NCBI RefSeq assembly: GCF_964194025.1
Contig: NC_134480.1
Coordinates: forward strand, 41,788,001 to 41,852,000
Direction of reading: 5' to 3'
DNA: 64,000 bases
DNA from: Convolutriloba macropyga
Lineage: Eukaryota
Shown here: piece after piece, positions 47,015 to 63,716 of the stretch
Position numbering within the stretch: position 1 is the first letter of the stretch
How the letters are laid out: every line of letters starts with the position of its first letter
Position numbers and translations under genes: made by a program
The notes under the pieces: model-generated
Told to the model about the DNA's origin: nothing
What the model saw: the letters and a program-made list of their open reading frames with translations, nothing else
The model's database searches: none

Positions 47015-47320
47015 TACTCAAGCTGTTCACACGAAAGGGATTAGCAGGATAATCCTTTAATAATAAATTAGGATGACTCATTTACAGTTACGTACGACTT
47101 TTCAAAAATGCACCTCACAGCATGACACCAAGCTGTTCACACAAAGGGGGATTAGCTAGGTAATGTTTTAATATTAAAATAGATAGGATGACTCATTTAC
47201 ACTTATGTACAGCTTACGTGATTTTCAAAAATGTACCTCACAGTATGATACCCAAGCCCTTCACACTAAAGGGATTAGCAAGATAGTGTCTTAACAACAA
47301 ACTAATAAGGTCATTTACCC
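46985..47320 (+). repeat. Left subterminal tandem array, 3 units of ~110-125 bp
   Basis: Core CCTCACAG(C/T)ATGA..C.CAAGC..TTCACAC.AA.GGGATTAGC recurs near 47002, 47113 and 47236. Confidence 0.9.
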
Positions 47321-47743
47321 ACCCATTCCCATATTAACAAAAAAGTACAATTTTTTATTTTTGGTTTTTACAGATTTTTTTTACAATTTTTTAAATCAAT
47401 TTTTTGTTTAAAATAGTGTTTCACTGTATCGTTTTAAACTGAAGTTCCAATTTTCCGATTTCAGAAAAATTTGTATTATTGTTTTGAAAATGTCTATTTC
47501 TTAATTTTTTTTAGCCAATCACATAATCTGTCAGATCTGATTTTGGAATGTTGATGCTGAAAAACATTTACGATTCATTTTGTCTTTTTTCTTGGTTGAA
47601 CATAAGTAGCCTAAAAAAAATGCAAAATACTCCAATTCTTCCTTTACTTCCTTCAACATCTTTTCTTTCTACTTCATTCAGATTTAGATTACGCTCCTAT
47701 CACGGAAGCATCAATATTTAAAACGGTAGTAACCGATAACAAT

Positions 47744-48199
47744 TTGGAATTATCTTTTGAGGTGGATTGCACTAGAGTAACAATTAAAACTCAGACAACT
47801 AGCTTGACACTTCCGAAGGATTTGTGGAGAACTTTAGAGGCAGCTAGACATCATAACCTCCACCTAGCCGTAGAAAAAGTCAACAATTCACTGCTTTCTC
47901 TCCAAACTTATTTTCAAACCATTGAAAGAATTCGAAAAGAACAAGGGTTTCACCCGTTGAAAGACAGCAAAGGAATTATGTTCCCGTACTCTCGTGACAT
48001 AAATCACTACGGTGTTTGGTGGGTAGAAGACATGTTCTCCAAGCATGCGGACTCATTTTCTAAAAAACCAGAAGCCTTCAATCTGCCCGATTTCAAAGAC
48101 CTTATTCTTCCTCCGATCCAGGAAACTGACAATGAAGAGACTCAATCATCTCATCAAAATATTCCTTTCTCGAACTATAGGTGTTCTCCAATAGAATAG
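47744..48199 (+). CDS. Polinton accessory protein, unknown function (true start probably upstream or spliced)
   Basis: 151-aa ORF inside the element. The frame stays open upstream of the TTG start to a pyrimidine-rich CAG acceptor-like site near 47680. Confidence 0.55.
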   Translation: MELSFEVDCTRVTIKTQTTSLTLPKDLWRTLEAARHHNLHLAVEKVNNSLLSLQTYFQTIERIRKEQGFHPLKDSKGIMFPYSRDINHYGVWWVEDMFSKHADSFSKKPEAFNLPDFKDLILPPIQETDNEETQSSHQNIPFSNYRCSPIE

Positions 48200-48539
48200 T
48201 GAGATAACTCGCTTTTGTTTGATGCTAAATTCACCCTCACGTGACTAAATATAGAAAACTCATCTTTGGCATCTCGTGATGTTACTAAAAATAGAAGTGA
48301 CATAACTATTACGTCATGACGCACGCTCTATTTTCTTTGGTTACGAATTATTTTATAACATCTCATTGGATACGAAGTTTATTTTTCGCTACTGTTCTCG
48401 TTCTTACTTAAATTTCATTGGTTCAAGATATCAAGCCCTTTCTTGAAGACAATTCATTCATTTGTTTCTTTCCACTCCAATATTCAGTTACCCTTGTATA
48501 CCCAACTTTTCTACTTTAAAAACTCATTTTTACTTACTG

Positions 48540-49136
48540 ATGGATCAAAGCTCAGTCTCACCTAATTCCAAAAAACAATTCTCCTTTCCCATCCGCAAAC
48601 GAAATTACAAGGGAAAACCAGTTGTTCCCTCTCCACAGTTTGATTACCACAATGAGAGCATGTTTTCTCTATTTAAAGACATGAACGATAAAAAAGACAA
48701 CACCGACTCAAAACCAATTGAGGAGCACGATGGAAGAAACAACTGTTGGTCCTTTCAAGAATACGGTAACCGGAAAGTTCAAATCAGCATCCCAGAGGAA
48801 ACAATCAACACAAACTCTAACTGGACTCACTTGAAAGTATTTCGCGAAAATGTGGAAACTGAGTATATTCTGCATCAATTTCTGATGCTATCGGCCAGAG
48901 AATTGAAGCTTGTTATTGAAAAGATACCTGAGATGATAAAAGAAGCACTACTGTTCGAACCTACTGTAGGTACTGCGAAGCTGGTGATTGACGAAACTGT
49001 GTTCCAACCAACTGATGTTAAGGAAAAAGCAAAATTTGATGTGTTCTGGGAGGTGAGTGAGACTGCTCGACGGAAGGTGTGTGTGACTAGAATATTTTTC
49101 CAAGATGATCCGAATCGATGTGATGTTTGTCTTTAG
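48540..49136 (+). CDS. Polinton accessory protein, possibly PC4-like ssDNA-binding fold
   Basis: ATG at 48540 (MDQSS). Segment RKVQIS...THLKVFRE...FLMLSARELKLVIEKIPEM has a beta-beta-beta-helix pattern resembling PC4, judged by eye only. TATA-like, E-box and ATF-like motifs lie upstream at 48237-48325. Confidence 0.6.
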   Translation: MDQSSVSPNSKKQFSFPIRKRNYKGKPVVPSPQFDYHNESMFSLFKDMNDKKDNTDSKPIEEHDGRNNCWSFQEYGNRKVQISIPEETINTNSNWTHLKVFRENVETEYILHQFLMLSARELKLVIEKIPEMIKEALLFEPTVGTAKLVIDETVFQPTDVKEKAKFDVFWEVSETARRKVCVTRIFFQDDPNRCDVCL

Positions 49137-49176
49137 TCACTTTTTAAAATTTAATGTTCCAGTACAGTTGCTTGAT

Positions 49177-49575
49177 ATGAACATTGAGGAATTTGTAGCG
49201 TTAGAGAAATAAATCAGTAAACTTTTTGTTGGAAATACAAAACGCAAAAATTATTTTTTGGCTGTCTGTCGAAGCTTGATCAAAAATGTAGATCTGGATA
49301 AAATCAACAGAGAAGCTCCGTTTGGGGGACTAATAGGAGTTGGTGACTCAAAGTTAGAAAAACTTCTCAATTGGTCAAAAGTTTTTCGATTACATGCTAC
49401 ATTTCATGATGCCGCAGGATACCTGAAAACAAATCTAAATATCGGCCCTGGATATTGTTACATGGTTCCATTTTTTAATTCTATATTGAATTTTTGTTTC
49501 TTGGGACATATAACAGGTCTTGCATATTGTTGTTTTTTGAAAATGTCACCACGATTCCAATTTATCAAAGTGTGA
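49177..49575 (+). pseudogene. Phospholipase A2-like (HD motif) small protein with a premature stop
   Basis: ATG 49177 MNIEEFVALEK, TAA at 49210-49212, then in-frame ...GGLIGVG...RLHATFHDAAGYL. A Gly-rich loop followed by HxxxHD resembles viral PLA2 domains. Confidence 0.5.
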
Positions 49576-49617
49576 ATCATTATTTCCTAAAGACGAACAA
49601 AACTCAGTTGCTCTCTA

Positions 49618-49872
49618 ATGACAGATCATCTAAATCACGCATCTGACTTTATTTTTGATAATAACAATCAAGAAAGACCTCCTTGGAAAATCTGTGGTCG
49701 CACTTGCTCTCGAACAGCTTTTTTGTCAATATTTCAGTGCTTAGTTGTATTAGTACTGCTTCTGTTTTCAATTATTAATCTTATTTTTGCTAGAACTTGT
49801 GACAAACGAACAGTTTGGATTGCTATTCTTTCAAGTGCCGTTGGTTATATACTTCCTAATCCCAGAACATAA
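49618..49872 (+). CDS. Small two-transmembrane-helix viral membrane protein
   Basis: 84 aa with hydrophobic segments FLSIFQCLVVLVLLLFSIINLIF and VWIAILSSAVGYILP. It ends 1 nt before the ATPase ATG. Confidence 0.75.
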   Translation: MTDHLNHASDFIFDNNNQERPPWKICGRTCSRTAFLSIFQCLVVLVLLLFSIINLIFARTCDKRTVWIAILSSAVGYILPNPRT

Positions 49873-49873
49873 A

Positions 49874-50614
49874 ATGAACAAAATCATTTCAACAAACGAA
49901 CGAATTTTGATGTATCTTGTTGGTCGTTCCGGATCTGGAAAAACTGTTTTTATCAATGATATGCTACGAATGAAAACTTTTCAACCATCATTTGATCGAA
50001 TTTTATACTTTTATAAGCACTTTCAGTCAATTTACGACACAATGATGCAATCAATTGCAGACATAGAATTCATTCAGGGAGTTGACTTTGATTTAATCGA
50101 TAACTTACCCGCTGACGGCACTAAATATTTACTTATATTCGATGATTCATTGGACATTCTTTCCAAGTGGGAAAAATTCAACGGAATTGCGACAGCCGGT
50201 AGACATCGAAACCTAAATTGTGTATATATCAAGCATAATCTCTTCCACAAAAACAAAACTGGACGTGATGCCGAGCTGCAGACTACTCACATTGTTTTGT
50301 TCAAATCACCGAGAGATGTGCAGCAGATTGATATCTTGGGGAGACAGCTAGGACTCGGAAGACAACTAAAACAGTGGTATGATGATGCAACAGAAAGTCC
50401 ATATGGTCATCTTATGATTGATTTGAGACCATCTACACCTGACTTGTTGAGATACTGTTCAAATGTAACATCATTTCCCTCAGAATTCTTTGTACCGAAC
50501 AGTCGTGCTCGTATTACTGATATTAATGATAAACGCACAGAACTATTATACTCTGCAGCTCTTTCGCAATCTCAGCAAGAAATTTCAACCAGCTTTCCTT
50601 CTAAATTGTCCTAA
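49874..50614 (+). CDS. A32/FtsK-HerA-family DNA packaging ATPase
   Basis: Walker A GRSGSGKT, Walker B LLIFDD, arginine-finger motif GRH, and downstream HIVLFKSPRD and PYGHLMIDL. Intact ORF from ATG 49874. Confidence 0.95.
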   Translation: MNKIISTNERILMYLVGRSGSGKTVFINDMLRMKTFQPSFDRILYFYKHFQSIYDTMMQSIADIEFIQGVDFDLIDNLPADGTKYLLIFDDSLDILSKWEKFNGIATAGRHRNLNCVYIKHNLFHKNKTGRDAELQTTHIVLFKSPRDVQQIDILGRQLGLGRQLKQWYDDATESPYGHLMIDLRPSTPDLLRYCSNVTSFPSEFFVPNSRARITDINDKRTELLYSAALSQSQQEISTSFPSKLS

Positions 50615-50846
50615 AGAGTTCATCAGATTTCACTGTGAGTGTATTGTAAACTTGATTGAAGGAAACCTCATAGCAGTAAGAAAAAATCAGTTTGTTCGCT
50701 TCCAAAAACAACTTAGAAAACTCACGTCAAAATCAACAACCCTCAATTCCAGAAGACTTATATTGGGCTCGAAAGCTGGAATAACAATTTTAAATTACAT
50801 ATATCAACCTTGTATGAATAAATTTTCAAATTTCTTCAATGAGTGA
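50526..50846 (+). CDS. Conserved small basic Polinton protein (putative virion core protein)
   Basis: CECIVNLIEGNL...KQLRKL...RRLILGSKAG pattern typical of the small gene that follows the ATPase in Mavericks. It overlaps the ATPase end. Confidence 0.75.
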   Translation: MINAQNYYTLQLFRNLSKKFQPAFLLNCPKEFIRFHCECIVNLIEGNLIAVRKNQFVRFQKQLRKLTSKSTTLNSRRLILGSKAGITILNYIYQPCMNKFSNFFNE

Positions 50847-51309
50847 GGTCAAAAAGTTTGTTCTTGTTCCAAAAGAACTGTGGGAGAGCAGAAAAAGGAA
50901 ATTACCGGAACCCTACAGCGAGATCTATAAAAAAGAAGAAACAGTTTTCCCAGTTATCAAAAAAGTGAAAGAAGAAGTTAGTTCCGAAAAAAACGAGCGT
51001 CCACATAAAGAACTTAAGACAGACCTGGATTTTCTTTATGAGAACTATCCTGAGACATTGAAAACTTTGAAAGAGATTTACGAAAACAAACGGTTAAAAA
51101 TTTCACTTTCCAATACAGTTATTGTTGACAACGTTGACGCAGGAGTTGATATAAAAACATTCCTTTGTTCAATTAAATTGAAGAACGCTCCAGTTGATCC
51201 AAACTATTTCCTTATTCTTAAAGTTCTAAATCTGAGACCACATCTGGTTAAAAACAACATTTTGAGGACAAAGTATGGCTCAGACTGGTTCAATTACAGT
51301 TTCAGATAG
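50839..51309 (+). CDS. Polinton protein of unknown function upstream of integrase
   Basis: 156 aa with N-terminal KKFVLVP and a C-terminal Trp. Overlapping start/stop arrangement with both neighbours. Confidence 0.75.
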   Translation: MSEVKKFVLVPKELWESRKRKLPEPYSEIYKKEETVFPVIKKVKEEVSSEKNERPHKELKTDLDFLYENYPETLKTLKEIYENKRLKISLSNTVIVDNVDAGVDIKTFLCSIKLKNAPVDPNYFLILKVLNLRPHLVKNNILRTKYGSDWFNYSFR

Positions 51310-52219
51310 AATCAAATTGCAGAAGTTGTATAAAGGGAAGGGACCAGCAGCTTTCGGTTCTATCAATAACCTAACAAAATCAAGTGGAATCAGTCGCGAG
51401 AGAGTTACTGAATTTTTACAGTCAAAAGACTCTTATACGAAGTACAAAGGAATCAGACGAAAATTTCCCCGGCTAAATGCGCATGCTCGCTATATTGATG
51501 AGATTTGGTGCTTGGATCTTGCTCAAATGGATAAACTATCACAATGGAACCGAGGTATCAACTTTTTACTCGTTACTGTCGATGTTTTTTCTCGATTCTT
51601 GCGAGTAGAAGCATTACGAAGCAAAGGAGCAGAGGGTGTGAAAGCAGCTTTTATCAAAATGTGTTCGAAAAAGAACGAACTCAATTTCCCAAAAACGTTA
51701 TGGCTAGATCAAGGAAAAGAGTTTTTTGGAGATATGGCCAATTTCTGCGAGGATGTGGGAGTCAAATATTTCACACTTATAGTGAAACAAAAGTAGCTTT
51801 TGGCGAGAGAGCTATACGAACCCTGAAAAACTTAATTTACCGCTACCTGGAGGAAAAGGACACATTATCTTACATCAAAGACCTGCAAATGTTTGTTGAC
51901 ATCATCAACTCTAGAATAAATCGAAGTTTTTGGTTTGGCACCCAAAAATGTAGTCAATGCTGACTTTTTGACTGCCATGTACAAGCGGATGAAACTACGA
52001 AAAAACAAGATGCCTAATTTTAAAGTAGGTGATAAAGTTCGGATGGTATTAGTAGGGCACAATTTTCAAAAAGGATATAAGCCTCACTATACACATGAAA
52101 TTTTCCTAATTCGAAAAATAAACACTTTGGCTCCTTTCCCGACTTACTTTGTTGTTGATCAGAAAGGAGACAACATTGATGGAATCTTTTACGAGCAAGA
52201 ATTGTCAAAAGTTAAATAA
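51275..52219 (+). pseudogene. Retroviral-like (rve, DDE) integrase, two frameshifts
   Basis: WCLDLAQM (D), VDVFSRF, LWLDQGKEF (D), FGERAIRTLK (E) and C-terminal FKVGDKVR...FYEQEL are spread over ORFs 51275-51796, 51544-51963 and 51935-52219. Shifts are near 51768 and 51930. Confidence 0.93.
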
Positions 52220-52246
52220 TCATTTTTCAATTAGTCGCGCTAGAAA

Positions 52247-52586
52247 ATGGACGGTTACAATCTGCCATATTTTAAAGGAGTTCCTCGTCAGAGAGGGCGT
52301 GGTTTTGGAGCCTTGGCTAGAACAGTCGCTAGAACAACTCTCCCAATTCTCAAGAAATACGTTTTACCTGCAGCAAAAAAAAATTGGACGAGATGTAATC
52401 GAGTCCGCCATTCCCGAAATTGGAGGTGTTTTATCAGGACAGACTTCAATTAAAAAAGCAGTAAAGAAGACTGCGAAATCAACAATACGAAAACAAGTTG
52501 GTGGTGGTATGAAAAAGAGGAAAAACACGAGACAAAGTATCGTTCGGCAAAAAATTCGGAAAGACTTTCTGAAGAACCTTGACTAA
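52247..52586 (+). pseudogene. Small basic/amphipathic virion protein (QRGxG type), frameshifted
   Basis: MDGYNLPYFKGVPRQRGRGFGALARTVARTTLPILKK... continues in the other frame after the A-run near 52375-52383 as KIGRDVIESAIPEIGGVLSG...QVGGGMKKRK. Confidence 0.75.
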
Positions 52587-52627
52587 TCATTTTCCCAAAC
52601 AAACGTCACAGAGTACAGTCAAACATC

Positions 52628-53427
52628 ATGAATTCGTTTTATCTTGAATTAGTATCCAACCCTTCCTCTCAAGTTTATCCTCAAAATACAATGGCTTCAT
52701 TCACTAATTTTCTTCCCGACAAAATTGAACTGGATGGATCTTGGGAAGTAGCTTTAGTCGAAGTATCATATCCCGGTATATGTTATAACGTTGAAGGAGG
52801 ATTGATGACCTTTCACTATGATGAGAAATTTAAGCATGTCTTTGCCATTCCACCAGCAGTTTTTAACTCTATGGATGAATTTGTAAAGAGTCTTACAGAT
52901 ATTCCCAAAAAAGCACGGCATCCCAAAAACTTAGATCCTCAATTTTCCATCAACATCGACAAAAAAGTCGAAGACTAACTTTTTGCAATAGAGAATCTCA
53001 AAATGTATCATTCAGCAAAAGTTTGGCTGCTAACTTGGGCGTTGAAGCTGACAAACCTGTTATGCCTTATTCGAAAAGATCATACAACACCAAGTCCTGG
53101 GCAACGGCAGATCTCCCTTTTGATATTACTGGAACACATACAGTTTTACTCTACTTGGATATAGTTGAACCCAATTCAGTCGGTGATGTGAAATGTCCTC
53201 TTCTACGCTCCTTTCCATTCAAACACCGAGAGTTCCATAATGATGAGATTTTTAAGAGATCGCAGGTTCTGAGTTATCGCAGTTTCGAACACTTGAGATT
53301 CCATAAAGTAATCAAATCGAACTTCCACAGTATCCATGTAGAATTAAGAAACGCTGCTGGACAGCTTGTTCCCTTCTTCCCTATTGGTCAAGTTCAACTT
53401 ACTTTATTATTCCAGAAAAAAACTTGA
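52628..53427 (+). pseudogene. Minor capsid protein (penton, single jelly-roll), one frameshift
   Basis: N-terminal FYLELVSN.SSQVYPQNT..SFTNFLP..IELDGSWEVALVEVSYP and C-terminal LYLDIVE..SVGD...PLLR...SIHVELRN..GQLVPF. The frames join at the A7 run 52961-52967. Confidence 0.9.
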
Positions 53428-53467
53428 TCATTTCCTCAATTATCATTATAAAAAACGGTCGGCTAAA

Positions 53468-54707
53468 ATGAATTCCTTGTCTCACTCTATGCCCGACTTT
53501 TTTCGGAAAGTTCCAATTTTAGACCCAATTCTTTGGTCCAATGAACAACAAATATTTCCAACAAATTCCTTAAACGAATCAACAATCGAATTTCAATTGG
53601 AAACTGATCGTAATATTTTCACTGACTTGCGATCTACTCGATTATTCATCAGAGGAAGGGTTATTAAAGGCGATCGAACACGTTTGGATAATGCCGCAGA
53701 AACATTACTGGTAAACAATGCTCTTCATTCACTTTTCTCTAATTGCGAAGTCTATCTAAACAATGAACAAGTTCACAGTGCCAATTCTCTTTATGCTCAC
53801 CAAGCTTTTGTCTCTGCTGAATTTTCAGGAACAAAAGGAACCAAGGAGAGCTTATCCCAATGCCAAGGATATCGATACGAGATTGAGCCGAACGATTTTA
53901 CAAAAAGAGCTTTTACAGATACTGTTTTTCAAAAAGATAAAGATGAATTTACTTTTTACGGTCCGTTGGCAATAGGTCTATTTGCTTGTGAAACTTTACT
54001 TCTCCCAAATGTCAACCTCAGACTGAAATTGATCCGATCATCTCCAGCGTTCTATATGATCGATACTGGTGGGCTGAACTCTGAGGCTATAATTTTGGAA
54101 GCTTGCCTTTTTACTAGACAGGTAGCGATCTCAGATAACTGGATGAGAAGTTTCAAAAGCAGACTGCTTCGAGAACCTGCCATATTTTACTATGATGAAG
54201 AACTTCCAAAGACGTTTATTATTCCCGCTGGACAGAACCAGTTTATACAAGAAAATATATTTCAAACAAACCAATTCGAATGATTGATATTGCTATGAAT
54301 CTGAATAATGAGTTCAGTGGAACATACAACACGAATCCGTTCCATTTTCGTAAATTTGGTCTTCGACAAGTTAAAATTGTGCGTGGGAATCAAACTATTG
54401 TAAACTTGAAAACAGAAAATCACGTGAGAGCTTATGCTGAAACAATGAAAGCACTCAAATTTGATGATGACGGTCCTAACATTCAATACAAGGATTTTAA
54501 AAAAATCATTTTCATTTATTTTTCGATCTCACTTCAACACAGGAGGCCAGTGTCGAAATGCATTTTCCTGATGTAGTTGGAGCAGGAATTCGTTTGGAGC
54601 TCTACTTTGCTAACAATTTGACCAATACTGTAAAATTATTCGTTAGTGGTGAACGTATAAGTTCAATTGCAGTTGATAAGGAGGGATCAGTCACCAAAAA
54701 TGGATAA
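53468..54707 (+). pseudogene. Major capsid protein (double jelly-roll), two frameshifts
   Basis: ATG 53468. Motifs IEFQL...DLRSTRL, VNNALHSLFSNCEVYLN, FSGTYNTNPFHF and terminal FDLTS...IRLELYF...TAA 54705-54707. Shifts are near 54263 and 54500. Confidence 0.9.
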
Positions 54708-55092
54708 TCAACAACTCTTACATGTCAACAGGTTCCCACACCTAAAGTTCAAATACCTCGGTTCCTTCCCTGCAGACCTTCGACCAAAATATTTACCTAC
54801 AAACACGTTTTGTATAATCAACATAGATCCATCTACTCAACCGGGCTCCCACTGGATTTTGCTTGCGAATAAAAATGGAAAGTTGTTCTACGGTGATTCG
54901 ATGGGAGAAGTTTTGGAAAAATATGGCATCAGGACAAGAGCAAACTTTGGTTCATTAGTACAGGAGAAACTCCAAGATTCAGAATTGTGTGGTTTATATG
55001 CTATTTATTTTGCACATGTGCTATTTTCTAAAGTTTCGTCTAAATATTTAAATGATTTTCATATATTGAAGTTCTTTGCTGATGTTTTGTAA
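54700..55092 (+). CDS. Adenain-like cysteine protease (capsid maturation)
   Basis: Catalytic His (PGSHW), Asp (YGDSMG), oxyanion Gln and Cys (LQDSELCGLY). The ATG at 54700 overlaps the MCP end. Confidence 0.93.
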   Translation: MDNQQLLHVNRFPHLKFKYLGSFPADLRPKYLPTNTFCIINIDPSTQPGSHWILLANKNGKLFYGDSMGEVLEKYGIRTRANFGSLVQEKLQDSELCGLYAIYFAHVLFSKVSSKYLNDFHILKFFADVL

Positions 55093-55320
55093 GTTTTGAA
55101 AACCAAAATCTTGAAATTTTTAAACAGTAATCCGTAAAATGTTGCAAATGGTTTTCAAAACTTTTTATTGAGGTTTTGTAATTTTGTATTTAATTATTTG
55201 TATGTGTATTTGTATCTAATTCAGTTATTTCAAAAAAGTCTTTTGTTAAATAGAGGTATTGGTAGGAAAACTGTTAATTAAAAACAGAGGCGAATTAAAT
55301 ATAAGATTAATGAAAACGAG

Positions 55321-58300
55321 TTATAAATCTAAAGGAGTAGTGTGAATACCATCTTCACAGACTTTACGCTTGGGATAAAAATATGAAAGTCCCACTTTCT
55401 TTAGTTCATAGGTACAAACTTTCTTGTTGTCAACAACTCTGAAGCCACGATTTGTTGAATAAACTCGCTCCTCATTGAACAGAACTTTTCTATATTTGTT
55501 TAGGGGCTCCTCAATGTTGCTCTTGTTGAGTCCTTTACTTGATAGTTTAACTGTGTCTGTTTCCTCATCGTAACAGCAATACGTCTTTGAACAAAGAGCA
55601 ATCATTTCAGAGCATCTAAATTCTCCCTTAAAAAGTCCAGGAGTTCTCTTGTCAAAGGCAGCATGTTTTCTGCAACATTCTCGTGGGAAGAAATTGCTGC
55701 TAGAGTTTGCTGCAAAGTTATCATTGCAGTCGCTCTGTCTCATCCAGTACCACACTGATCGCATTTGTGGTCGAATGATGTCTACAATTTTTTCTTCACT
55801 AAGGGCCATATAGAGACTGTCGGTATCCATTTCAATGAGTTCGTACTTGTTCTTATCACAGAAAGGGGTGAAGAAGTTGTATTTAAGTTGTAACATGGTG
55901 AGTTTGGCGTACTGGAGGATGAAGAAGCCCACAATTATTGGCTCTTTATGATCGATACGCGACTTGCTCATTTCTACCTCATATATCTGCTCTGGTAGCT
56001 CATTCATAGTCTTGAAAAACCTATTGTTAATAAATTTGTCCACCTGTGATCCTTTCACGTACTTGGTATTCGTATGTCGACTACGGTCCATGATCTGATA
56101 TCCATACGAACTGTTTCCAATCAGCTTCATTGTCTCCGCAACGACTGTTGACTCCTTATTCTGGTCTCCTTCGCGGCGGGCATCGACAACATTCTGAACA
56201 AACGTCTCAAAGCAGCGCCGGGGAGTGTATTGGAGAAACCAAAAGACGTCTTTTAGGATCACACCTTTTTCTAGATAAAATAACAAAAGTGATGTAATAA
56301 CTGGTCCTCGTTCAAGCTTGAAACTGGAAATGAGCATTTTTCTGGGTCTGGATAGTAATTTGTTGCGTTCTGCAAACTCTTTCATATGGTCCCCAATATC
56401 ATCGCGTCCCACTTCACAGTTCTTGAAAATTGGAGGAAAGTCTTCAAAGTAAGGATACATTTCCTCTGGAACTTCAAGACTACCATTGACGACACCAAAC
56501 AGTTCTCCACTTTTAATTTTCTCAATGAGCGAGTTTTTGTTCATCGATGGTTGGAAGGGATAGTTTAACTTGAGAAAGTCTTTAACCCCATTTGTGTTGT
56601 CTGTCCGCCATTTCTTCCATTGACACTCCCAGATCTCTTCAACATTTAACCCCAATCCCTTCAGGTACTCTCTTCTATCATTGTCACGTTCTCTCCGCTT
56701 CAATCCGCTTTCTATGTCCTCGAAGAGAAGCGGTTTTTCCTCTTGACACGGACAAAAATGAAAGAAGCAACCCATCGCTTCAAAAACCGTGTTGCAATGG
56801 TTACAAAACCCATCAACTAAATAAGGACCGAGCTTCTTTTGTTTCTTGTGTGTGAACTGGGTTTGCATTTTACAATTGGGGTGAACCTGTTGGAAGTAGT
56901 CCATGACCTGCTGTTCAAAGTAGCTTCTCCAGTTCCTCTTCGGATGAAATTTTTCAGTCTCTTCATTGTACTCCCACTTTGTATAGGGTCCTGTTGGCAT
57001 CTCTTTTGCCATGGAAAAAGGGTACAACTGACTGGCATCTATTCCGACGATGGACTTGCAAACGTTTTCTGACTCTCGAATTTTTGTTTCACCAACTTTT
57101 GCATACCTTGTAAAGATAATTGAGGGTCCCCCTGTTCGCCACTTTCGAATGTAATTATCATATTCTTTATCCTTCTCACAAAACGGAAAAAAAAGCTGCA
57201 TCTGTTGACGAATGAAGGAACCTGTTTGCCAAGTTGGGAAGAGTGTAACCCAACTTCAACATGTCTACTTGTCTTGAGTGGTAAAAACTGATCATTTTCT
57301 TCATAGCCTCAAGTGTAGGTTCGACATCTTTGTTATTGTACCACATGAGGAAGTCACGAAACGTCTGCATACCTTTTCTTTCCCATATATTTTGGAGCTC
57401 CAAGTAATTTTCTTCGGCATTTTGTGGAACTTTCTTGAGTCTCAACTTCTTCAAAATTTCATCCTGCTCCATTCCACCGTTTTTCAATTCCACAAACATA
57501 TCGTAATCGACTGAAAGAACGTTGTGATTTTTCAACTTGCTCCAAAAGCTGTCAATTGGTGGCAGTTGGGATACATTCAACTTCTCAATACTGTCGAACC
57601 ATTCATAGGGGAAGAAACCTTTCTCTTCACTCGCTCCATAGGCTTTTAGGAAATTATCCAGAGTTGTCGCTCCTCCCAGGAAGTTTAAAATGTCCAGAAA
57701 CTGTAGACCAAGAAAATTCATGCCAATATATTTATTCCCCATTCGAATCACTTTAGGAATAACGTTTTTTTCTATTAAGAGGTGATGCAGAAGATACTCT
57801 TTTATTAGGTTTAAATCATACCGAGAGCTGTTGAATCCGAAAACAGGTATGGTACTGTAATATTTTTCAAAATCTTGTCTCAATTTTGATATCACCCTGA
57901 GCTCGCTTCTCAGTCTCCTAATTTCAAGATCTTCGTCTTCCTCCACCTCGGGTTCAGCTTCGTTCTCAAATAAGTCTTCCGCTCCGGTGGGTACCTGCTT
58001 GTCTTCCACTGGAACCAGTTGTCGAAGAGCCCAATATTTTTCTTCCAATACCAGTACGAAATCATTGAGTTTCTCCCTCATTAGAAGCGTGCTCTTTTCC
58101 GCTATATTACTCAAGCTGGATACAAAATCACGGATTAGTTGAAGTGGATCTTCGTTGCAAATAAAAATTGGTTCGGAGAGCAGATTCGAGGATATTGACA
58201 CACTAATGGGGACATGTTTTCCAATCCATGAAGTCAAATCTGTGTTTCTGAGTGTACTGTCGGGGACTGTTGTTGACTCAAAATCGAATACGATAAGATG

Positions 58301-59646
58301 AGAAAACAATCTCAGCTCTTGCGGAACATTAATATTTACATCTTCCAGACGTTCAAAAATAGTTTCAGATAACTGATAGGCTCCTGTTGGATATTTGTGT
58401 TGCGTGTTTTCTGAGCAGTTTTGCATGTGCCGCAATAAGTTAAGGATCTGTCGAAAAATTGATCGCATACGTAGCACCGGAACGTTTTGAGGAATTTGTT
58501 GATGTCTGCTGTCCAACAAATGTGATTTTCATATCTCAGTAACGAAGTTTTCTTTGAACGTTTCATCGAGGAGCGACGAGTATGTTCAGCAAACATTTCG
58601 GATTCTTCGTCAAAAAATATGGAGTAAATCTGAATATTTCTGTCAACTAGAGCCTCAAGAACAGGAATATCGTCTTCATGTATTCCTTGAAACGTTTCGT
58701 CATTTCTCCGTGTCGCTGAGAGAAACATCCGCATCAATTCCATTGTTTTTTGTTGTAGCTCATTGCTACCATATAATTCATAGGGCAAGGAACGAAACAT
58801 ACATAAATTGTCTTGAAAAGGTTTGTTTTCGCAGTCAGATACAAAACATTTAACTATTGGACTCCTCAGTAAGGTTGATGGAATTGAATGTTCTATGCAT
58901 CCTAGCGGAACACCACTGAGGAGAAATACAAAGAAAGTGACATTTGTAACACAATAAAACTTCCACTTTGTGTCTGGACGTTGATTAATTAGATTTGGTA
59001 AAAATTCATCTTGTCTCAACATTGATTTAATATAATTGAGATCTGAGGCATCAGAGAGAACCATGGGATTTGAGAATACGGGGTTGTTATCTGCTGCGTA
59101 GTAGTAGAGGAATTCGTCAGGATTTTGCACACTCTGCAGCACGAATCCAAACGAAATATTGATTTTAGCTGAACTGGGTAACTCGTTGTAAACACAATCC
59201 AATTTGTCGATCACTGTTTCATGGTTGATCTCCATTATTTTGAAGTTGTGAACTTTCTTTCTGGACAATTCAAGAACCGAGTCTCTCAGAAAGTGTTGAA
59301 CCGTTTGACGTTCACTATGAAGAGCGGGAGAGTCTCCATAGATAGATAAGTCAACTTCCTCGTAGGTGCTAAGAGTTGAACGTTGGTGACTGTTTCGTTT
59401 GTGATGTAGAAGTTGATAATAAGTAGAGAAGGACAAGGGACAGCTGCTACAGGAAAACTTCTTTTTGATAACCAGAGACGGTGCATGTACGGAAGCAATG
59501 TGTTTCTGCAATTTATCTTGGTCAGGAAATGATTTGGGGCATTGTGAGCAAACTATTGCGTGAAGCTTCTGATGTCTGCTCATATTGGATTTCATAAGCT
59601 TATTGCAGGAAGAACACTGTTCCTTTGGGTTAGAACTTCTGGGCAT
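55321..59646 (-). pseudogene. Protein-primed family B DNA polymerase polyprotein (C2H2 fingers, terminal-protein region, vOTU-like protease, exonuclease, polymerase with VSR-like insert), two frameshifts
   Basis: ATG 59646 (MPRSS). ExoI FDFES, ExoII GFNSSRYDL, ExoIII YNNKDV, PolA DASQLYP, PolB KLIGNSSYG and PolC MDTDS lie across ORFs 58336-59763, 57176-58519 and 55321-57201. Shifts are near 58440 and 57190. Confidence 0.96.
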
Positions 59647-60070
59647 TTTCTCTAAAAAAAACAGAGCAAGATGAGGATTTGTTGTTTGAAATCTGTGAAA
59701 GTTTGCACGTAATTGAAAAGTGAAAATGAAAGTAAATTTTAAAATTGAAAATAATTTCCGCAATTATTAAACTGATTTTTGAATTGTTAACAGGGAAAAT
59801 GAAAGTTTGCCTGAAAACTGCTGTCCTCTCTACTGATTTCAAACTCCAGAAATTGTTTTGGAAATAATACTAAAATGTGCACTTTGCTACCTTTTTATTA
59901 TTAAACTCTTTGGAAAAAGTTAGAGTTTTTCACAAAGAATTAATTCAGAATTAATTCATAAATAGGTATTAGAAATTCTCAAAAAACATGATGAAAGTTT
60001 TCACTATAACAAAATACAAAATTGAAAAATGATTATCCAAAATTTTTGAAAAGTTTGTCCAGGAAAATCT

Positions 60071-60649
60071 TTAAAAGAGTTTTCGACTGATCGATTTTTT
60101 AGCAGGGATGACAAACTCAATGTCTTCATCGTTGGAATCAGCTTCTGATTTATCCAACTTCTTTTGACGTTTACGTGGAGCCTCCAAAACTGAGGAGCTG
60201 ATTTCATTTGGAGATGAAGGAGGTGGCGTCACAGTTAACGGAGAGTCATTGTCAAGTTGCCACAAAGCTTCATAAAGTTCGCGGTCCCTAAGGTGTCCTA
60301 ACTGATATTCGTACATAGGTTGGCAGCTCAGTTCGTAATCCATAAATTTCTCTCGAACTTGTTTTGGTACGTCAGTTAGGTTCTCACAATCTTTTACCTG
60401 GAGTCCTACTGGTTCCAGTTCAACTGAGTGGAAGTCAGGAACAACTTCGCTGTGAGGTAATACGAATTCACCTCCGTGCTTTATCATACTAAAGTCTTCG
60501 AAAATTGCGCGAGGCAGAATAGTACGTTCCTCGGCTAGCCATTGCCCATTTACTTTATTTTCGATTACCAGAACCACATCGTTCGAATAAATGGGAAGAA
60601 AAAGATTGATTCGCTGATTCGTTCCCTTTGATACAATTTTGAGGTCCAT
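60071..60649 (-). CDS. Polinton accessory protein with NLS-like PRKRQKK and acidic tail
   Basis: Intact 192-aa ATG ORF. A splice-acceptor-like TTGTTTGTAG lies 1 nt before the ATG. Confidence 0.7.
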   Translation of the reverse strand: MDLKIVSKGTNQRINLFLPIYSNDVVLVIENKVNGQWLAEERTILPRAIFEDFSMIKHGGEFVLPHSEVVPDFHSVELEPVGLQVKDCENLTDVPKQVREKFMDYELSCQPMYEYQLGHLRDRELYEALWQLDNDSPLTVTPPPSSPNEISSSVLEAPRKRQKKLDKSEADSNDEDIEFVIPAKKSISRKLF

Positions 60650-60689
60650 TCTACAAACAATCTTAATCTTACCTCCCGAAAGCAGATTT

Positions 60690-60975
60690 TATTAAAAGAA
60701 AACTTACCTGTTTGTTTTTGGATTTAGAGGTGATGTGAATGGTTGCGGTATCTACTGTTGAGGGGAAGTTTTGGCAGGCTAAAATGGTTCAGTTTAAATA
60801 CAGGAACAGACTAAGATTTCTATTAGTTAAATTTGAGCAAACTTACCTGTTTGTATTTGGATTTAGATGTGAAGTGAAGTGTTGCGTTATCTACTGTTGG
60901 GGGAAATTTTGGCTGGCTAAAATGGTTCAGTTTTAATACAGGAACAAATCAAGGTTTCTATTAGTTAAATTTGTT
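60690..60975. repeat. Tandem duplication of ~138 bp containing a minus-strand splice donor CAG|GTAAGT
   Basis: AACTTACCTGTTTGT.TTTGGATTTAGA...GCTAAAATGGTTCAGTTT.AATACAGGAACA occurs at ~60701 and ~60840. Confidence 0.85.
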
Positions 60976-61005
60976 TGCTTACCCGCTTCAACACTGCAAG
61001 TGTTC

Positions 61006-61165
61006 AACTTGAAACTGTCAATAAGGAGAAAGAAACAAAGTCTTTCTGAAAACTGTCAACTTGAAACTGTCAACAAGGAGAAAGAAACAAAGTCTACCTG
61101 AAAACAAAAAGATAACTTGAAACTGTCAACAACGAGAAAGAAACAAAGTCTATCTGAAAACAGAA
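61006..61165. repeat. Three tandem ~52-56-bp repeats
   Basis: AACTTGAAACTGTCAA.AA.GAGAAAGAAACAAAGTCT...CTGAAAAC occurs three times. Confidence 0.9.
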
Positions 61166-61239
61166 AGTTAAATTAAATTAGAATTTTGACCAACTGATTT
61201 TTAGAATTTGTTTTGAAATAATGAATAGTAGTGGCGAAT

Positions 61240-61932
61240 GAATGAGTAATCCAAACTAATTTGTTATTGAGGGTTCATATTGCTAATCCTTTTCGTGAGA
61301 ACAGCTTGGGTATCAAGCTGTGAGGAACATCTTTGGTAATTGACATTAGTAAAGGGTAATATTGTAAGGGGTAAATGACCTTACTGGATTGTTAAGAGAT
61401 TATCTTGCTAATCCTTTTCGTGAGAACAGCTTGGGTATCGTGCTGTGAGGTACATTATTGTCGATTGACATTTTCAAAGTGTAATATGTGAAAAGGTAAA
61501 TGTCCTTACTAAGAGATTATCTTGCTAATCCTTTTCGTGAGAACAGCTTGGGTATCATGCTGTGAGGAATATCTTTGGAGTTTGACATTAGTAAAGTGTA
61601 GTATGAGAAAAGGTAAATGACCGTACTGATTTGTTGTTAAGGCACTATCTTGCTAATCCCCCTCGTGTGAACAGCTTGGGTATCGTGCTGTGAGGTACAT
61701 TATTGGAATTTGAAATTAGAAAAGTGTAATAAGGGAAAAGGTAAATGACCTTATTATTTTGTTGCTAAGTCATTTTCTTGCTGATCCCTTTCGTGTGAAC
61801 AGCGTGGGTATCATGTTGTGAGCTACGTCTTTGGCATTAGTAAAGTGTAATATGAGAAAAGGTAAATGACCGAAATAGATTGTTAGGGTTTTTGCTCATC
61901 TCTGTCGTGAGAATAAATTGAGTTTCATGCTG
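61240..61932 (-). repeat. Right subterminal tandem array, 5 full units plus 1 degenerate unit of ~117-128 bp, inverted relative to the left array
   Basis: TTGCTAATCC.TTTCGTG.GAACAGCTTGGGTATC.TGCTGTGAGG recurs near 61280, 61405, 61522, 61650 and 61778, and in degenerate form at 61892. Confidence 0.93.
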
Positions 61933-62196
61933 GTTCGAAATGAGTAGTTATTAAGAAATTTAACTTCTTTTCTTTTTTACAAATGAAACTTTATTCAGCT
62001 GCGGGAAACAGTTTTTTCCTTTGTTAAATTTGAGACTCAAATAAGTTGTAAATTACACTTAATTCTCTAAATTTTTCATCCGGGGTTCGAGTCCGGGTGG
62101 GATCCTCTTTTGCTAAAACTGATTTTGTGTTAATAAAATAGGATGTCATTACGTTATGATCCATTATAAATATGGTTAAAATCTAAGTCATCTCAA

Positions 62197-62338
62197 GTAC
62201 CAATGGTTCAGTGGTAGTATCTGGGACTCCCATCCGGGGGTCCCGGGTTCGATCCCGGGTGGGGTCCTCTTGTGTTGTTCAATGGTTTCTCGGCTGAAAA
62301 TCTGGTGTACATTGACGAGCATTAGCCGGCGGGGTTTT
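62197..62338 (+). ncRNA. tRNA-Gly-derived RNA polymerase III transcription unit (not a canonical tRNA)
   Basis: A box TGGTTCAGTGG (62204-62214), B box GGTTCGATCC (62246-62255), CTCCCA anticodon-loop-like segment, TATAAATA at 62165-62172, first T4 run at 62335-62338. The acceptor stem pairs only 4/7. Confidence 0.65.
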
Positions 62339-62947
62339 CTATATAGAGTCTGATAGTTGCATGGGTATATGTGATAGGTAAGACGGGAGTTGACACATAG
62401 CGCATATCACATATACTCTAAGTGGCTTTCAGACTCGCAGAAAACCTTCAGCCATCAATGTCCAGAAGCCCTAATGAAACTATTTTCTTTCCATTAAAAA
62501 ACCCATTTTTTCCGAATTTTGACACCTATTGTACCCCCACATCATCCTTAGAATGATACCATTCATCAGGAATAAACTGTATTCAACAACTAACATCTAT
62601 TTTGAAAAAAAAATTGAAACTCTAAACTTAAAACACAAATGTATTCAGATCTAAATTATGCAGATTTCATTTTCGAATACACCAAACTGCTGCGAGTATG
62701 TCGAAAGACTTTTGAAATATAAAACAAATACTCACTTGTAAGTTTTCCCAATTTTCATTTTCGACTACACTTAGTAGTTTGATTATTGTCAGATATTTTT
62801 TTTATTCTGTACAGATAATCAAATCACTAGGGGTAAATCGAACCAGCGACTTTGGGGTTTGTTTATGTTTTTGGTTTTTTGTGAACCGTTTGTTTCTTTT
62901 GTTATTTTTTTTTGTTTTTTTTTTAGTTTTTTTATTTTTAGGCTTAT

Positions 62948-63172
62948 CTAAATCAGATCCAGATCAGCTAAGTTTTCGTTGAGCACCTTGCAAATGGCCT
63001 TGCAGTTTCTATATTTAACTGGTCGGCCAGTGCGTTTGGCTACTTGTTTGCGAACACCGGGACGGCCCGCGGTTCTCTTAGCCATTTGAGGCCTGCTAAA
63101 TTTGGGAGTGGGAGGAGAACCTTCCCAGTCAGAGACTGGTTCCTCCTTGATAGGTGTAGTTGGCAAACTCAT
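62948..63172 (-). CDS. Small basic protein (74 aa) with duplicated AKRT(A)GRP motifs
   Basis: ATG 63172 MSLPTTPIKEE...QMAKRTAGRPGVRKQVAKRTGRPVK. It is a GC-richer island in AT-rich flanks, with a TATA/Inr promoter upstream. Confidence 0.7.
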   Translation of the reverse strand: MSLPTTPIKEEPVSDWEGSPPTPKFSRPQMAKRTAGRPGVRKQVAKRTGRPVKYRNCKAICKVLNENLADLDLI

Positions 63173-63215
63173 TTTTAGCAAAAATTCAACAACAATTTTG
63201 TTAACAAAAGTACCA

Positions 63216-63250
63216 GAATGAAAAGTGATTTTGTGTTGCAGCTATTTATA
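63216..63250 (-). promoter_or_regulatory. TATA box plus initiator for the small basic ORF
   Basis: Minus-strand TATAAATA (63250-63243) and TCATTC Inr-like motif (63221-63216) ~30 nt downstream, ~45 nt before the ATG. Confidence 0.6.
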
Positions 63251-63598
63251 CTCATTTCAAATACACAAGTGTGCATGGATTAATGCTCGGAGATTAACTC
63301 ACACCAAAACTTTTACATTTTTAACCAAATTCTCACCCCCACACAGTATGAGCCATCTATCATAACAGTATGTCATTTATTAACACCCACACAAAAATGA
63401 ACCATTCAATAACTTTTAATTAAAACACACTTTTTATCTATATGAGTTTCTCATCTTAGTTCATTTAAATCACTACAAGCACTTAATCCCCTAATGACTA
63501 AAACAATATTTTCTCACGCTACAGTAAAACTTAATCCTTTGTAAACAAAATATTCACAAGAAAAAATGGACAAAAGTGACTACGAAAATACCGGTGAG

Positions 63599-63716
63599 TC
63601 ATGCTGTGAGGAGGTACATCTTTGGAAATTGGAGGGTAGGAGCCTATACCTAATGTTAATACATAGGTACTTCCTTTTACCCCCCCCCCCCCCACTCTTG
63701 CTCACGATATACTACT
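63599..63716 (-). repeat. Right terminal inverted repeat of the Polinton
   Basis: TCATGCTGTGAGGAGGTAC...CACTCTTGCTCACGATATACTACT, followed directly by the TSD CTTTGG. Confidence 0.97.

What the first reader, a model, noticed from the sequence alone, without database searches (positions are those of the whole stretch)
62165..62338. tRNA-Gly-derived Pol III RNA inside a Polinton: possible analogue of adenovirus VA RNA
Seen: GTACCAATGGTTCAGTGGTAGTATCTGGGACTCCCATCCGGGGGTCCCGGGTTCGATCCCGGGTGGGGTC closely follows eukaryotic tRNA-Gly(CCC). A and B boxes are intact and a TATA lies ~30 bp upstream, but the acceptor and anticodon stems are disrupted. The first T4 terminator is ~70 nt past the tRNA body, giving a ~140-nt RNA with an extra possible stem (CGGCTGA 62291-62297 with TTAGCCG 62322-62328). 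Known: adenoviruses, relatives of Polintons, make Pol III VA RNAs of ~160 nt that counter PKR and RNAi and are thought to be tRNA-derived. I know of no described equivalent in Polintons. Inference: promoter kept while cloverleaf lost fits a viral regulatory or decoy RNA.
Basis: partly seen in the sequence, partly recalled or inferred. Interest (0 to 1): 0.8.

Follow-up and report, generated by a model that had tools for sequence, protein, structure and literature searches.

The report
Decayed tRNA relic in Polinton arm
A worn-out tRNA-like sequence that still has RNA polymerase III promoter boxes sits in an extra 1.7-kb piece in the right end of one branch of a Polinton family; it looks like a passenger, not a conserved virus-style regulatory RNA.

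Summary
At 62196-62267 (+) there is a tRNA-derived sequence with a near-consensus A box, a perfect B box, an upstream TATA and a T4 run about 70 nt downstream. It lies inside a TSD-bounded Polinton (46903-63716). It is not a working tRNA: ARAGORN finds nothing at default settings, and Rfam tRNA scores 12.7 bits against a threshold of 29.

It lies in a 1,666-bp segment (61933-63598) that splits the right inverted repeat. The left arm lacks this segment. So do all four relatives sampled through their polymerase and a fifth from another assembly. Ten arms at eight loci, found through a small ORF in the same segment, do carry it, so it travels with one sub-lineage. A 20-kb tandem array holds eight more copies.

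Among the copies the tRNA-like part varies as much as its flanks. Its cloverleaf pairs in 67% of cells with no covariation. Array copies have lost the B box or the T run. The proposed extra stem folds no better than shuffles, and the T4 is the base of a long palindrome. No copy was seen in about 150 kb of non-Polinton DNA, so an abundant host SINE is not supported either.

The best reading is a hitchhiking tRNA-derived relic that may still be transcribed. The VA-RNA analogy is unsupported but not excluded.

The parts
46903..63716 (.). Polinton/Maverick copy, 16.8 kb and decayed. Flanked by the 6-bp target-site duplication CTTTGG at 46897-46902 and 63717-63722. Ends are 5'-AG...CT-3'.
   Evidence: The sibling L001 is 97% identical over 10.5 kb.
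46903..47014 (.). Left terminal inverted repeat. It is followed directly by the ~120-nt subterminal tandem repeats (47002-47320).
63599..63716 (.). Right terminal inverted repeat, 93% complementary to the left one.
61256..61932 (.). Right-arm subterminal tandem repeats (~117-128 nt units), the counterpart of 47002-47320. In this copy the extra segment separates them from the terminus.
61933..63598 (.). Extra segment of 1,666 bp that splits the right inverted repeat. The 8-nt direct repeat TCATGCTG flanks it (61925-61932 and 63599-63606). The segment is absent from the left arm and from L001, L002, L006, L016 and L009. It is present in 10 arms at 8 loci.
61933..62555 (+). Non-coding half of the segment, which holds both tRNA-like pieces and the palindrome. 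L004 lacks this half but has the other half.
62066..62112 (+). 5'-truncated second copy of the tRNA-like unit: anticodon-loop side through the T arm plus the same short trailer. It has its own B-box-like GGTTCGAGTCC at 62084-62094.
62165..62172 (+). TATAAATA, 25-32 nt upstream of the tRNA-like body. Kept in 7 of 10 arms and altered in most array copies.
62196..62267 (+). The tRNA-like body (72 nt). A box 62204-62214, B box 62246-62256, a 6-nt anticodon loop and a weak acceptor stem.
62268..62338 (+). Trailer ending in the first T4 (62335-62338). It would give an RNA of about 140 nt if transcribed from about 62196.
62331..62447 (.). Long imperfect palindrome (hairpin). Its 5' base contains the T4 run.
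   Evidence: -48.3 kcal/mol, z = -6.85; no compensatory pairs; 3 of 109 columns vary among 10 arms
62948..63181 (-). Small ORF (77 aa as listed; 74 aa from the shared ATG) in the other half of the segment. It is basic, with two GRP motifs, and converges on the tRNA-like unit.
55324..59646 (-). Zinc-finger plus protein-primed type-B DNA polymerase gene region. The polymerase part is broken in this copy. One sibling (L015) has it as a single 1424-aa ORF.
51275..52216 (+). rve-type integrase gene, broken in this copy.
49910..50611 (+). A32-type packaging ATPase gene, open in this copy.

Best explanation
The sequence is a decayed relic of a tRNA gene or of a tRNA-derived retroposon head. It is present as one full-length and one 5'-truncated copy.

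The relic belongs to a 1.67-kb segment that entered the subterminal repeat array of the right arm in an ancestor of one sub-lineage of this Polinton family. Since then it has been copied passively whenever that sub-lineage transposed (at least eight loci). It has also been amplified in a tandem array by unequal exchange between the flanking ~120-nt repeats.

Its A and B boxes are still close to consensus in the Polinton-borne copies. RNA polymerase III may therefore still load and make an RNA of about 140 nt that ends at the T4 at the foot of the neighbouring palindrome. Nothing in the comparative data shows that the element needs this RNA.

Shown: the anatomy, the asymmetry of the arms, the presence/absence pattern, the lack of extra conservation and the lack of structure.

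Inferred: the origin from a tRNA or SINE, neutrality, and possible residual transcription.
For: 1. The segment 61933-63598 interrupts an otherwise continuous inverted repeat. In the left arm, and in both arms of sibling L001, the terminus abuts the 120-nt repeats directly. An 8-nt direct repeat flanks the segment.
2. It is absent from L001 and L002 (cores about 97% and about 96% identical to the window), from L006 and L016 (about 73-90%) and from L009 (another assembly). L004 has only the ORF half.
3. It is present, with the same junctions, in 10 arms at 8 loci with different flanks.
4. The tRNA-like body varies at 5 of 72 columns among the 10 arms, against 165 of 1706 for the whole arm (p = 0.54). 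Against the array copies its identity is 0.81, compared with 0.79 for the whole non-coding block, and 43% of equal-length windows are at least as conserved.
5. Cloverleaf: 67% of cells pair, which equals the shuffles, and the changes break pairs. Rfam tRNA scores 12.7 bits against 29.
6. Of the 8 array copies, 2 lack the anticodon arm and B box, 3 have a C-to-T change in the B box and 4 have lost the T run.
7. The window copy itself is dead: 7 of 13 genes are broken relative to L001.
Against: - In all 10 Polinton-borne arms the B box and T run are intact, and the A box is intact in 9.
- The block from the tRNA-like body through the palindrome varies less than the rest of the arm: 14 of 252 columns against 151 of 1454, p = 0.015. 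For the palindrome alone it is 3 of 109, p = 0.007. Both tests are post hoc.
- No copy was seen outside Polinton-arm DNA, so a free-living SINE parent has not been shown.
- The arms are only 1-5% diverged, so there is little power to detect or exclude selection.
- No expression data were available.
Confidence: 0.6

Rival explanations
1. Functional Pol III non-coding RNA of this Polinton sub-lineage. The tRNA-like promoter would drive a small RNA that serves the element. This could be a VA-like decoy. With read-through of the T4, it could instead be a tRNA-plus-hairpin precursor of the kind known from murine gammaherpesvirus 68 (TMERs; named from my own knowledge).
For: - A box, B box, spacing, upstream TATA and T4 are all present.
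- The boxes and T run are intact in 9-10 of 10 Polinton-borne arms.
- The unit is found only in Polinton-arm DNA in the sample.
- The block 62196-62447 is the least variable part of the arm. The palindrome folds strongly, z = -6.85.
- One carrier (L015) has an uninterrupted 1424-aa polymerase ORF, and its arm is 99.6% identical to that of L014, at another locus. This suggests recent activity.
Against: - The unit is absent from five relatives and from the L004 arm.
- It lies in a segment that splits the inverted repeat.
- The tRNA-like body is no more conserved than its flanks.
- There is no covariation in the cloverleaf or the palindrome.
- The 143-nt fold is not unusual, z = -1.31.
- No Rfam family reaches its threshold.
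- The T4 lies between the tRNA-like body and the hairpin, unlike the direct tRNA-hairpin junction of TMERs.
- The array copies decay freely.
Confidence: 0.15
2. A copy of a dispersed host SINE (or two nested copies) that landed in the Polinton arm. The tRNA-like part would be the SINE head and nothing more.
For: - A tRNA-like head with A and B boxes is followed by a non-tRNA body of a few hundred nt.
- The truncated second copy shares the same trailer beyond the tRNA end, as copies of one retroposon family would.
- An A-rich run at 62497-62502 lies about 300 nt downstream of the start of the body.
- Such origins are documented for tRNA-like sequences in the terminal repeats of other elements (PMC10886601).
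Against: - There are 0 copies in about 150 kb of non-Polinton DNA of the same assembly. All 22 matches lie in Polinton-arm DNA.
- There is no other copy in the 47 kb of host DNA in the window.
- No clear target-site duplication or terminal A tail surrounds the unit.
- There are no matches in IMG/VR or JGI metagenome contigs.
- A low-copy or extinct SINE cannot be excluded.
Confidence: 0.12
3. A DNA-level role. The two B boxes (62084-62094 and 62246-62256) would bind TFIIIC and act as a chromatin boundary that shields the arm and the neighbouring small ORF from silencing, as tRNA genes and B-box-only sites do in yeasts and mammals (from my own knowledge).
For: - There are two B-box matches 162 nt apart, both invariant in all 10 Polinton-borne arms.
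- They lie between the subterminal repeats and a small, apparently expressed-type ORF that has its own TATA.
Against:
- The array copies lose or mutate the B boxes.
- Relatives do without the unit.
- The invariance among arms that are 1-5% diverged carries little weight.
Confidence: 0.05

Closest known systems
tRNA-like sequences with Pol III promoters in the terminal repeats of non-autonomous LTR elements (Helenus; with Cassandra and Ajax for 5S) - 'TRIMp3', PMC10886601
   Same: [quoted passage not shown] That paper judges a functional RNA unlikely and proposes origin by insertion of a SINE into the repeat.
   Different: Those are short LTR retrotransposons with the unit in both LTRs. Here the carrier is a 17-kb self-synthesizing DNA element, the unit is in one arm only, and it breaks the symmetry of the inverted repeat.
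tRNA genes carried by polinton-like viruses and virophages (558 tRNA calls among about 8300 genomes; PMC12220804)
   Same: tRNA-type sequences occur inside members of the wider Polinton-related virus world.
   Different: Those pass tRNA detectors and are discussed as working tRNAs for codon compensation. This one fails the detectors at default settings and has a 6-nt anticodon loop.
Adenovirus VA RNAs
   Same: Internal A and B boxes, a predicted length of about 140-160 nt, and a host element related to adenoviruses through its polymerase, ATPase and capsid module.
   Different: VA RNAs are highly structured and conserved within their virus groups. Here there is no significant fold, no covariation, no Rfam match, absence from close relatives, and a position in an inserted segment of the terminal repeat.
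tRNA-derived SINEs
   Same: A degenerate tRNA head with intact boxes followed by an unrelated body. A 5'-truncated second copy is typical of retroposed copies.
   Different: No dispersed copies were found in about 150 kb. No target-site duplication or tail was recognised.
tRNA-miRNA-encoded RNAs (TMERs) of murine gammaherpesvirus 68 (from my own knowledge)
   Same: A virus-borne tRNA-like Pol III unit with a hairpin downstream.
   Different: Here the hairpin starts 64 nt after the body, with a T4 at its foot. It is about 115 nt long rather than the size of a pre-miRNA, and it shows no compensatory change.

Membership tests
Functional tRNA gene | Passes tRNA detectors and the covariance model at their thresholds | tested here: not met
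   ARAGORN default gives 0 genes. Rfam gathering gives 0. The tRNA model scores 12.7 bits against 29, E = 2.8, in a 96-nt search.
Functional tRNA gene | Cloverleaf with a 7-bp acceptor stem and a 7-nt anticodon loop, kept across copies | tested here: not met
   The loop has 6 nt and the acceptor stem has mismatches. 67% of cells pair, the same as the shuffles.
Type-2 Pol III transcription unit | A box and B box at tRNA-like spacing | tested here: met
   A box 62204-62214 matches 10 of 11 positions and B box 62246-62256 matches 11 of 11, with starts 42 nt apart. The consensus patterns come from my own knowledge.
Type-2 Pol III transcription unit | Downstream run of four or more T | tested here: met
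   TTTT at 62335-62338. Kept in 10 of 10 arms and lost in 4 of 8 array copies.
Type-2 Pol III transcription unit | Actually transcribed by Pol III | not testable with these tools
   No expression or occupancy data were available.
Adenovirus VA RNA | Sequence/structure match to the described family | tested here: not met
   No Rfam family reaches its threshold in the window. The permissive scans list only weak chance-level hits, none of them to VA.
Adenovirus VA RNA | Stable, conserved, extensively base-paired fold | tested here: not met
   The 143-nt fold has z = -1.31 and the trailer z = +0.12. There is no covariation.
Adenovirus VA RNA | Conserved presence among related genomes | tested here: not met
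   Absent from L001, L002, L006, L016 and L009, and from the L004 arm.
Adenovirus VA RNA | Counteracts PKR or saturates the RNAi machinery | not testable with these tools
   This is a functional property.
tRNA-derived SINE | tRNA-like head with internal promoter | tested here: met
tRNA-derived SINE | Many dispersed copies at unrelated loci | tested here: inconclusive
   0 copies outside Polinton-arm DNA in about 150 kb. This bounds the density at roughly one per 50 kb or fewer. The whole genome was not available.
tRNA-derived SINE | Own target-site duplication and an A-rich or LINE-like tail | tested here: inconclusive
   None was recognised around 62196-62555. Old copies may have lost them.
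Polinton/Maverick | Protein-primed type-B polymerase, rve integrase and A32-type ATPase | tested here: met
   Pfam hits. 826 polymerase relatives at E <= 1e-10.
Polinton/Maverick | Terminal inverted repeats, 6-bp target-site duplication and 5'-AG...CT-3' ends | tested here: met
Polinton/Maverick | Capsid protein and maturation protease genes | not tested
   Several ORFs have no Pfam hit. I did not pursue them.
TMER-type tRNA-hairpin unit | Pre-miRNA-size hairpin directly after the tRNA-like body, without a terminator in between | tested here: not met
   There is a 64-nt spacer, the T4 lies at the foot of the hairpin, and the hairpin is about 115 nt.

The most novel reading that the evidence does not exclude
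One young, still active-looking sub-lineage of an animal-type Polinton has domesticated a tRNA-derived Pol III unit in its right arm, together with the adjacent long palindrome. The unit would make a small non-coding RNA that helps the element, for example against host silencing. That would be the first Pol III RNA gene described for a Polinton and a functional parallel to the VA RNAs or TMERs of larger DNA viruses.
Probability: 0.12. Interest if true: 0.7.

Novelty: new member of a known kind. Interest (0 to 1): 0.3.

Why it matters
If the unit were a working Pol III RNA gene, it would add a class of gene to Polintons and tie them functionally to adenoviruses. That would be worth knowing.

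As the evidence stands, it is a further example of a known pattern: sequences derived from small-RNA genes lodge in the terminal regions of mobile elements and get copied along. This matters mainly for annotation. Such pseudo-tRNAs should not be read as tRNA genes, as SINEs or as viral RNAs without expression data.

The by-product may be more useful. The family shows arm polymorphism: with the segment, without it, or with half of it. The arm segment has also grown into a tandem array. This documents how Polinton ends are remodelled.

Tried and rejected
1. Rfam at gathering score and at permissive thresholds over the window, over 1.5 kb and over 96 nt gave only chance-level hits.

2. I looked for copies through spurious ORFs over the unit. 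The 44-aa reverse-frame ORF found no candidate. The gene caller of that assembly did not call ORFs there.

3. Pattern scans of IMG/VR (two patterns) and of JGI metagenome contigs gave 0 matches. The bacterial/archaeal genome collection was not scanned, as it is irrelevant.

4. I first read the segment as a one-off insertion private to this copy (after). I rejected this when ORF-based look-ups found it in ten arms.

5. With four arms, I read a hint of selection on the block from the tRNA-like body to the palindrome (7 of 252 columns, p = 0.0015). With ten arms this weakened to p = 0.015, and it vanished for the tRNA-like body alone (p = 0.54).

6. The palindrome shows no compensatory pairs. The only symmetric change is a 2-nt TA indel in both arms of the palindrome, seen by eye.

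7. I looked for inverted ends or a poly(A) tail at the borders of the 1,666-bp segment to name its insertion mechanism and recognised none.

8. The host organism could not be named. The tools give no taxonomy for the ENA assemblies ERZ25071359 and ERZ25074608, and no paper cites the first of these, the only one I searched for.

9. The small ORF has no Pfam hit and no relatives beyond its own cluster.

Slips to disclose:
- The A-box and B-box consensus patterns used in the script and in the membership rows come from my own knowledge, not from a tool.
- Early in my reasoning I also inferred, from the overlapping ORF bounds, roughly where the polymerase frame changes. That is not repeated in the notes or the report.

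Full report
**What is there.**

Read directly from the sequence:

| Feature | Coordinates | Note |
|---|---|---|
| A box TGGTTCAGTGG | 62204-62214 | |
| B box GGTTCGATCCC | 62246-62256 | starts 42 nt after the A box |
| TATAAATA | 62165-62172 | |
| First run of four T | 62335-62338 | first after the tRNA-like body |

- ARAGORN at default settings finds no tRNA in the window, and Rfam finds nothing at gathering score.
- With a lowered threshold, ARAGORN calls a 72-nt pseudo-tRNA at 62196-62267. It has a 6-nt anticodon loop and a mismatched acceptor stem.
- The same setting gives 2 hits in 40 dinucleotide shuffles of the window and none in 2000 shuffles of the local stretch.
- In a 96-nt search the Rfam tRNA model reaches 12.7 bits against a threshold of 29.
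- A second, 5'-truncated copy lies at 62066-62112. It has the T arm and the same few bases of trailer.

I could not test the assignment to tRNA-Gly(CCC), because no genuine tRNA of the host was available. None occurs in the window or in the 16 fetched loci, of which the first nine were scanned.

**The proposed RNA.**

- The 143-nt stretch from 62196 to the T4 folds no better than shuffles (z = -1.31).
- The trailer with the suggested 7-bp stem has z = +0.12.
- The T4 is not a free-standing terminator. It is the 5' foot of a long imperfect palindrome at 62331-62447 (-48.3 kcal/mol, z = -6.85).

**The carrier.**

- ORFs between 47.6 and 59.8 kb hit the A32-type ATPase, the rve integrase and the type-B polymerase of organelles and viruses.
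- The inverted terminal repeats are 46903-47014 and 63599-63716.
- The ends read 5'-AG...CT-3', and CTTTGG is duplicated on both sides.
- This is a Polinton of 16.8 kb, and the tRNA-like unit lies 1.45 kb inside its right end.
- The copy is dead. Measured against the gene set of sibling L001, 7 of 13 genes are broken:
  - The polymerase changes frame at least once.
  - A 412-aa gene changes frame twice.
  - Genes of 267, 112 and 193 aa each change frame once.
  - The integrase has four in-frame stops.
  - A 146-aa gene has one in-frame stop.

**The arms are not symmetric.**

- In the left arm the 112-nt terminus runs straight into ~120-nt tandem repeats (47002-47320).
- In the right arm the matching repeats are at 61256-61932.
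- Between them and the terminus lie 1,666 bp (61933-63598) with no counterpart on the left.
- The 8-nt direct repeat TCATGCTG flanks this segment. The repeat may extend to 11-13 nt with an indel.
- I recognised no inverted ends and no A tail, so I cannot name the mechanism of entry.

**Relatives.**

A search with the polymerase found 826 relatives. All the close ones come from one ENA assembly, ERZ25071359.

Relatives found through the polymerase, which is an unbiased sample for the segment:

| Locus | Core identity to the window | Right arm |
|---|---|---|
| L001 | 97% | terminus abuts the 120-nt repeats in both arms; no segment |
| L002 | about 96% | no segment |
| L006 | 80-87% | no segment and no 120-nt repeats |
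| L016 | 73-90% | no segment and no 120-nt repeats |
| L009 | 55% polymerase identity, another assembly | no tRNA-like sequence |

Relatives found through the 77-aa ORF in the segment, which has five clusters of 74-aa relatives:

- L003, L007, L008, L010, L011, L012 (arm duplicated in tandem), L014 and L015 carry the whole segment with the same junctions.
- Their flanks differ, except that L011 and L012 share one locus.
- That makes ten arms at eight loci, counting the window. These arms are 95.4-99.6% identical, apart from the two L012 copies, which are identical to each other.
- L015 has an uninterrupted 1424-aa zinc-finger-polymerase ORF, so this sub-lineage looks recently active.
- L004 has only the ORF half, joined to the repeats at a different point.
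- L005 is a tandem array of at least eight units of 2.1-2.2 kb. Each unit is a few 120-nt repeats plus the segment, about 80% identical to the window, with no core genes in 20 kb.

The unit is therefore neither private to this copy nor a general feature of the family. It marks one sub-lineage and travels with it.

**Is it a host SINE?**

- About 150 kb of DNA from the window and the same-assembly loci does not match Polinton references. It holds no copy of the block 62196-62555, and all 22 matches lie in Polinton-arm DNA.
- The window's 47 kb of host DNA has none.
- IMG/VR and JGI metagenome contigs have none.

This argues against an abundant SINE. It does not exclude a rare or extinct one.

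**Is it under selection?**

Among the ten arms:

| Region | Variable columns | p against the rest of the arm |
|---|---|---|
| tRNA-like body | 5 of 72 | 0.54 |
| Whole arm | 165 of 1706 | - |
| tRNA-like body through palindrome | 14 of 252 (rest of arm: 151 of 1454) | 0.015, post hoc |
| Palindrome alone | 3 of 109 | 0.007, post hoc |
| Terminal repeat | 6 of 89 | - |
| Small ORF | 18 of 234 | - |

- The B box and T run are intact in 10 of 10 arms, the A box in 9 and the TATA in 7.
- The five changes in the body fall in stems and are not compensated.
- On ten distinct copies the cloverleaf pairs in 67% of cells, exactly as the column shuffles do.
- Against the array copies, the body is 0.81 identical where the whole non-coding block is 0.79. 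43% of windows of equal length are at least as conserved. The A box is in the top 8% of 11-nt windows.
- In the array, two copies have a 25-nt deletion that removes the anticodon arm and the B box. Three have a C-to-T change in the B box, and four have lost the T run.
- The palindrome has no compensatory pairs.
- The more variable parts of the arm are AT-rich with homopolymers, where mutation and long-read assembly error are both higher. This may explain part of the contrast.

**Reading.**

The simplest account is a passenger. A tRNA gene fragment or SINE head, duplicated once and then truncated, came in with or into a 1.67-kb segment in the right subterminal repeats of an ancestor of one sub-lineage. 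It has been copied with that sub-lineage since. The flanking direct repeats make both loss and tandem amplification easy, which fits the arms with, without and with half of the segment, and the L005 array.

The promoter boxes are good enough that Pol III may still transcribe about 140 nt. I put 0.6 on this reading.

A working Pol III RNA gene is not excluded. It could be VA-like, or a tRNA-hairpin precursor if the T4 is read through. In its favour are the intact boxes in every Polinton-borne copy, the restriction to Polinton DNA and the quiet block 62196-62447. However, the arms are too similar for this to weigh much, and every direct test of structure or conservation came out negative. I put this at about 0.15, a dispersed-SINE copy at about 0.12, and a TFIIIC boundary role at about 0.05.

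**Known parallels.**

- tRNA genes are reported in polinton-like viruses and virophages: 558 calls in about 8300 genomes (PMC12220804).
- tRNA-like and 5S-like sequences with Pol III promoters sit in the LTRs of the non-autonomous elements Helenus, Ajax and Cassandra. The author proposes origin by SINE insertion and judges a functional RNA unlikely (PMC10886601).
- No paper in the library holds both 'Polinton' and 'VA RNA'.

This case is a new member of that pattern in a new kind of carrier.

- I began to write a tRNA-Gly sequence from memory in my reasoning and stopped. It was used nowhere.
- The A-box and B-box consensus patterns come from my own knowledge.
- Early in my reasoning I also noted, from overlapping ORF bounds, roughly where the polymerase frame changes. 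This is not repeated here.
- The consensus lines printed by the alignment tools were not used.

Noticed in passing
window 62331-62447: Long imperfect palindrome (about 115 nt, -48.3 kcal/mol, z = -6.85) just after the tRNA-like trailer. Array copies have a longer, perfect centre. Only 3 of 109 columns vary among ten arms, the quietest stretch of the arm, yet there are no compensatory pairs. It could be a foldback or MITE relic or a DNA-level signal.
   Followed up: partly
window 62948-63181 (-): Small basic ORF (74 aa from the shared ATG) with two GRP motifs, a TATA about 70 nt upstream and an AATAAA downstream. It is kept open in 12 distinct sequences in 5 clusters (73-93% identity). It has no Pfam hit and no relatives outside its own cluster among 1.84 billion representatives.
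   Followed up: partly
L005 (ENA ERZ25071359 ctg36889) 1-20225: Tandem array of at least eight 2.1-2.2-kb units, each made of a few 120-nt Polinton subterminal repeats plus the 1.67-kb segment. Several Polinton right termini are interspersed and there are no core genes. A Polinton arm appears to have turned into a satellite-like array.
   Followed up: partly
window 59662-60686, with ORF 60071-60649 (-): A second presence/absence region. This ~1-kb stretch has a 192-aa ORF (weak PD-(D/E)XK hit, E = 0.007). L001 and L002 lack it. L007, L008, L010, L011, L012 and L015 have it, L014 with a shorter ORF.
   Followed up: partly
window 60697-61170: Two further tandem repeat families (138-nt x2 and 52-56-nt x3) lie between the last gene and the 120-nt repeats. 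They are shared with the siblings.
   Followed up: no
L012/L013 (ctg37103): The whole right arm (equivalent to window 61050-63716) is duplicated in tandem with a 3.6-kb period and 100% identity. L007 also has an extra solo right terminus plus the ORF half 3.8 kb outside the element.
   Followed up: no
window 62763-62838: A short hairpin that gives weak, sub-threshold miRNA-family hits in Rfam (22-23 bits against 63-80). The surrounding ~100 nt are rearranged between the window and L004.
   Followed up: no
window 13312-18838 and 19039-24566: A 5.5-kb direct duplication at 99.9% identity, separated exactly by the N run 18839-19038. It is either a real recent tandem duplication or an assembly artefact at a gap.
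   Followed up: no
L003 9440-9500: In this sibling the last ~30 nt of the right terminus are replaced by a (CCA)n microsatellite, and about 3.4 kb (equivalent to window 57988-61370) are missing. It is a deleted derivative that still carries the segment.
   Followed up: no
L001 6283 and 22267: I could not find a matching 6-bp target-site duplication at the two ends of this otherwise well-preserved sibling. This may be a sign of recombination between copies.
   Followed up: no
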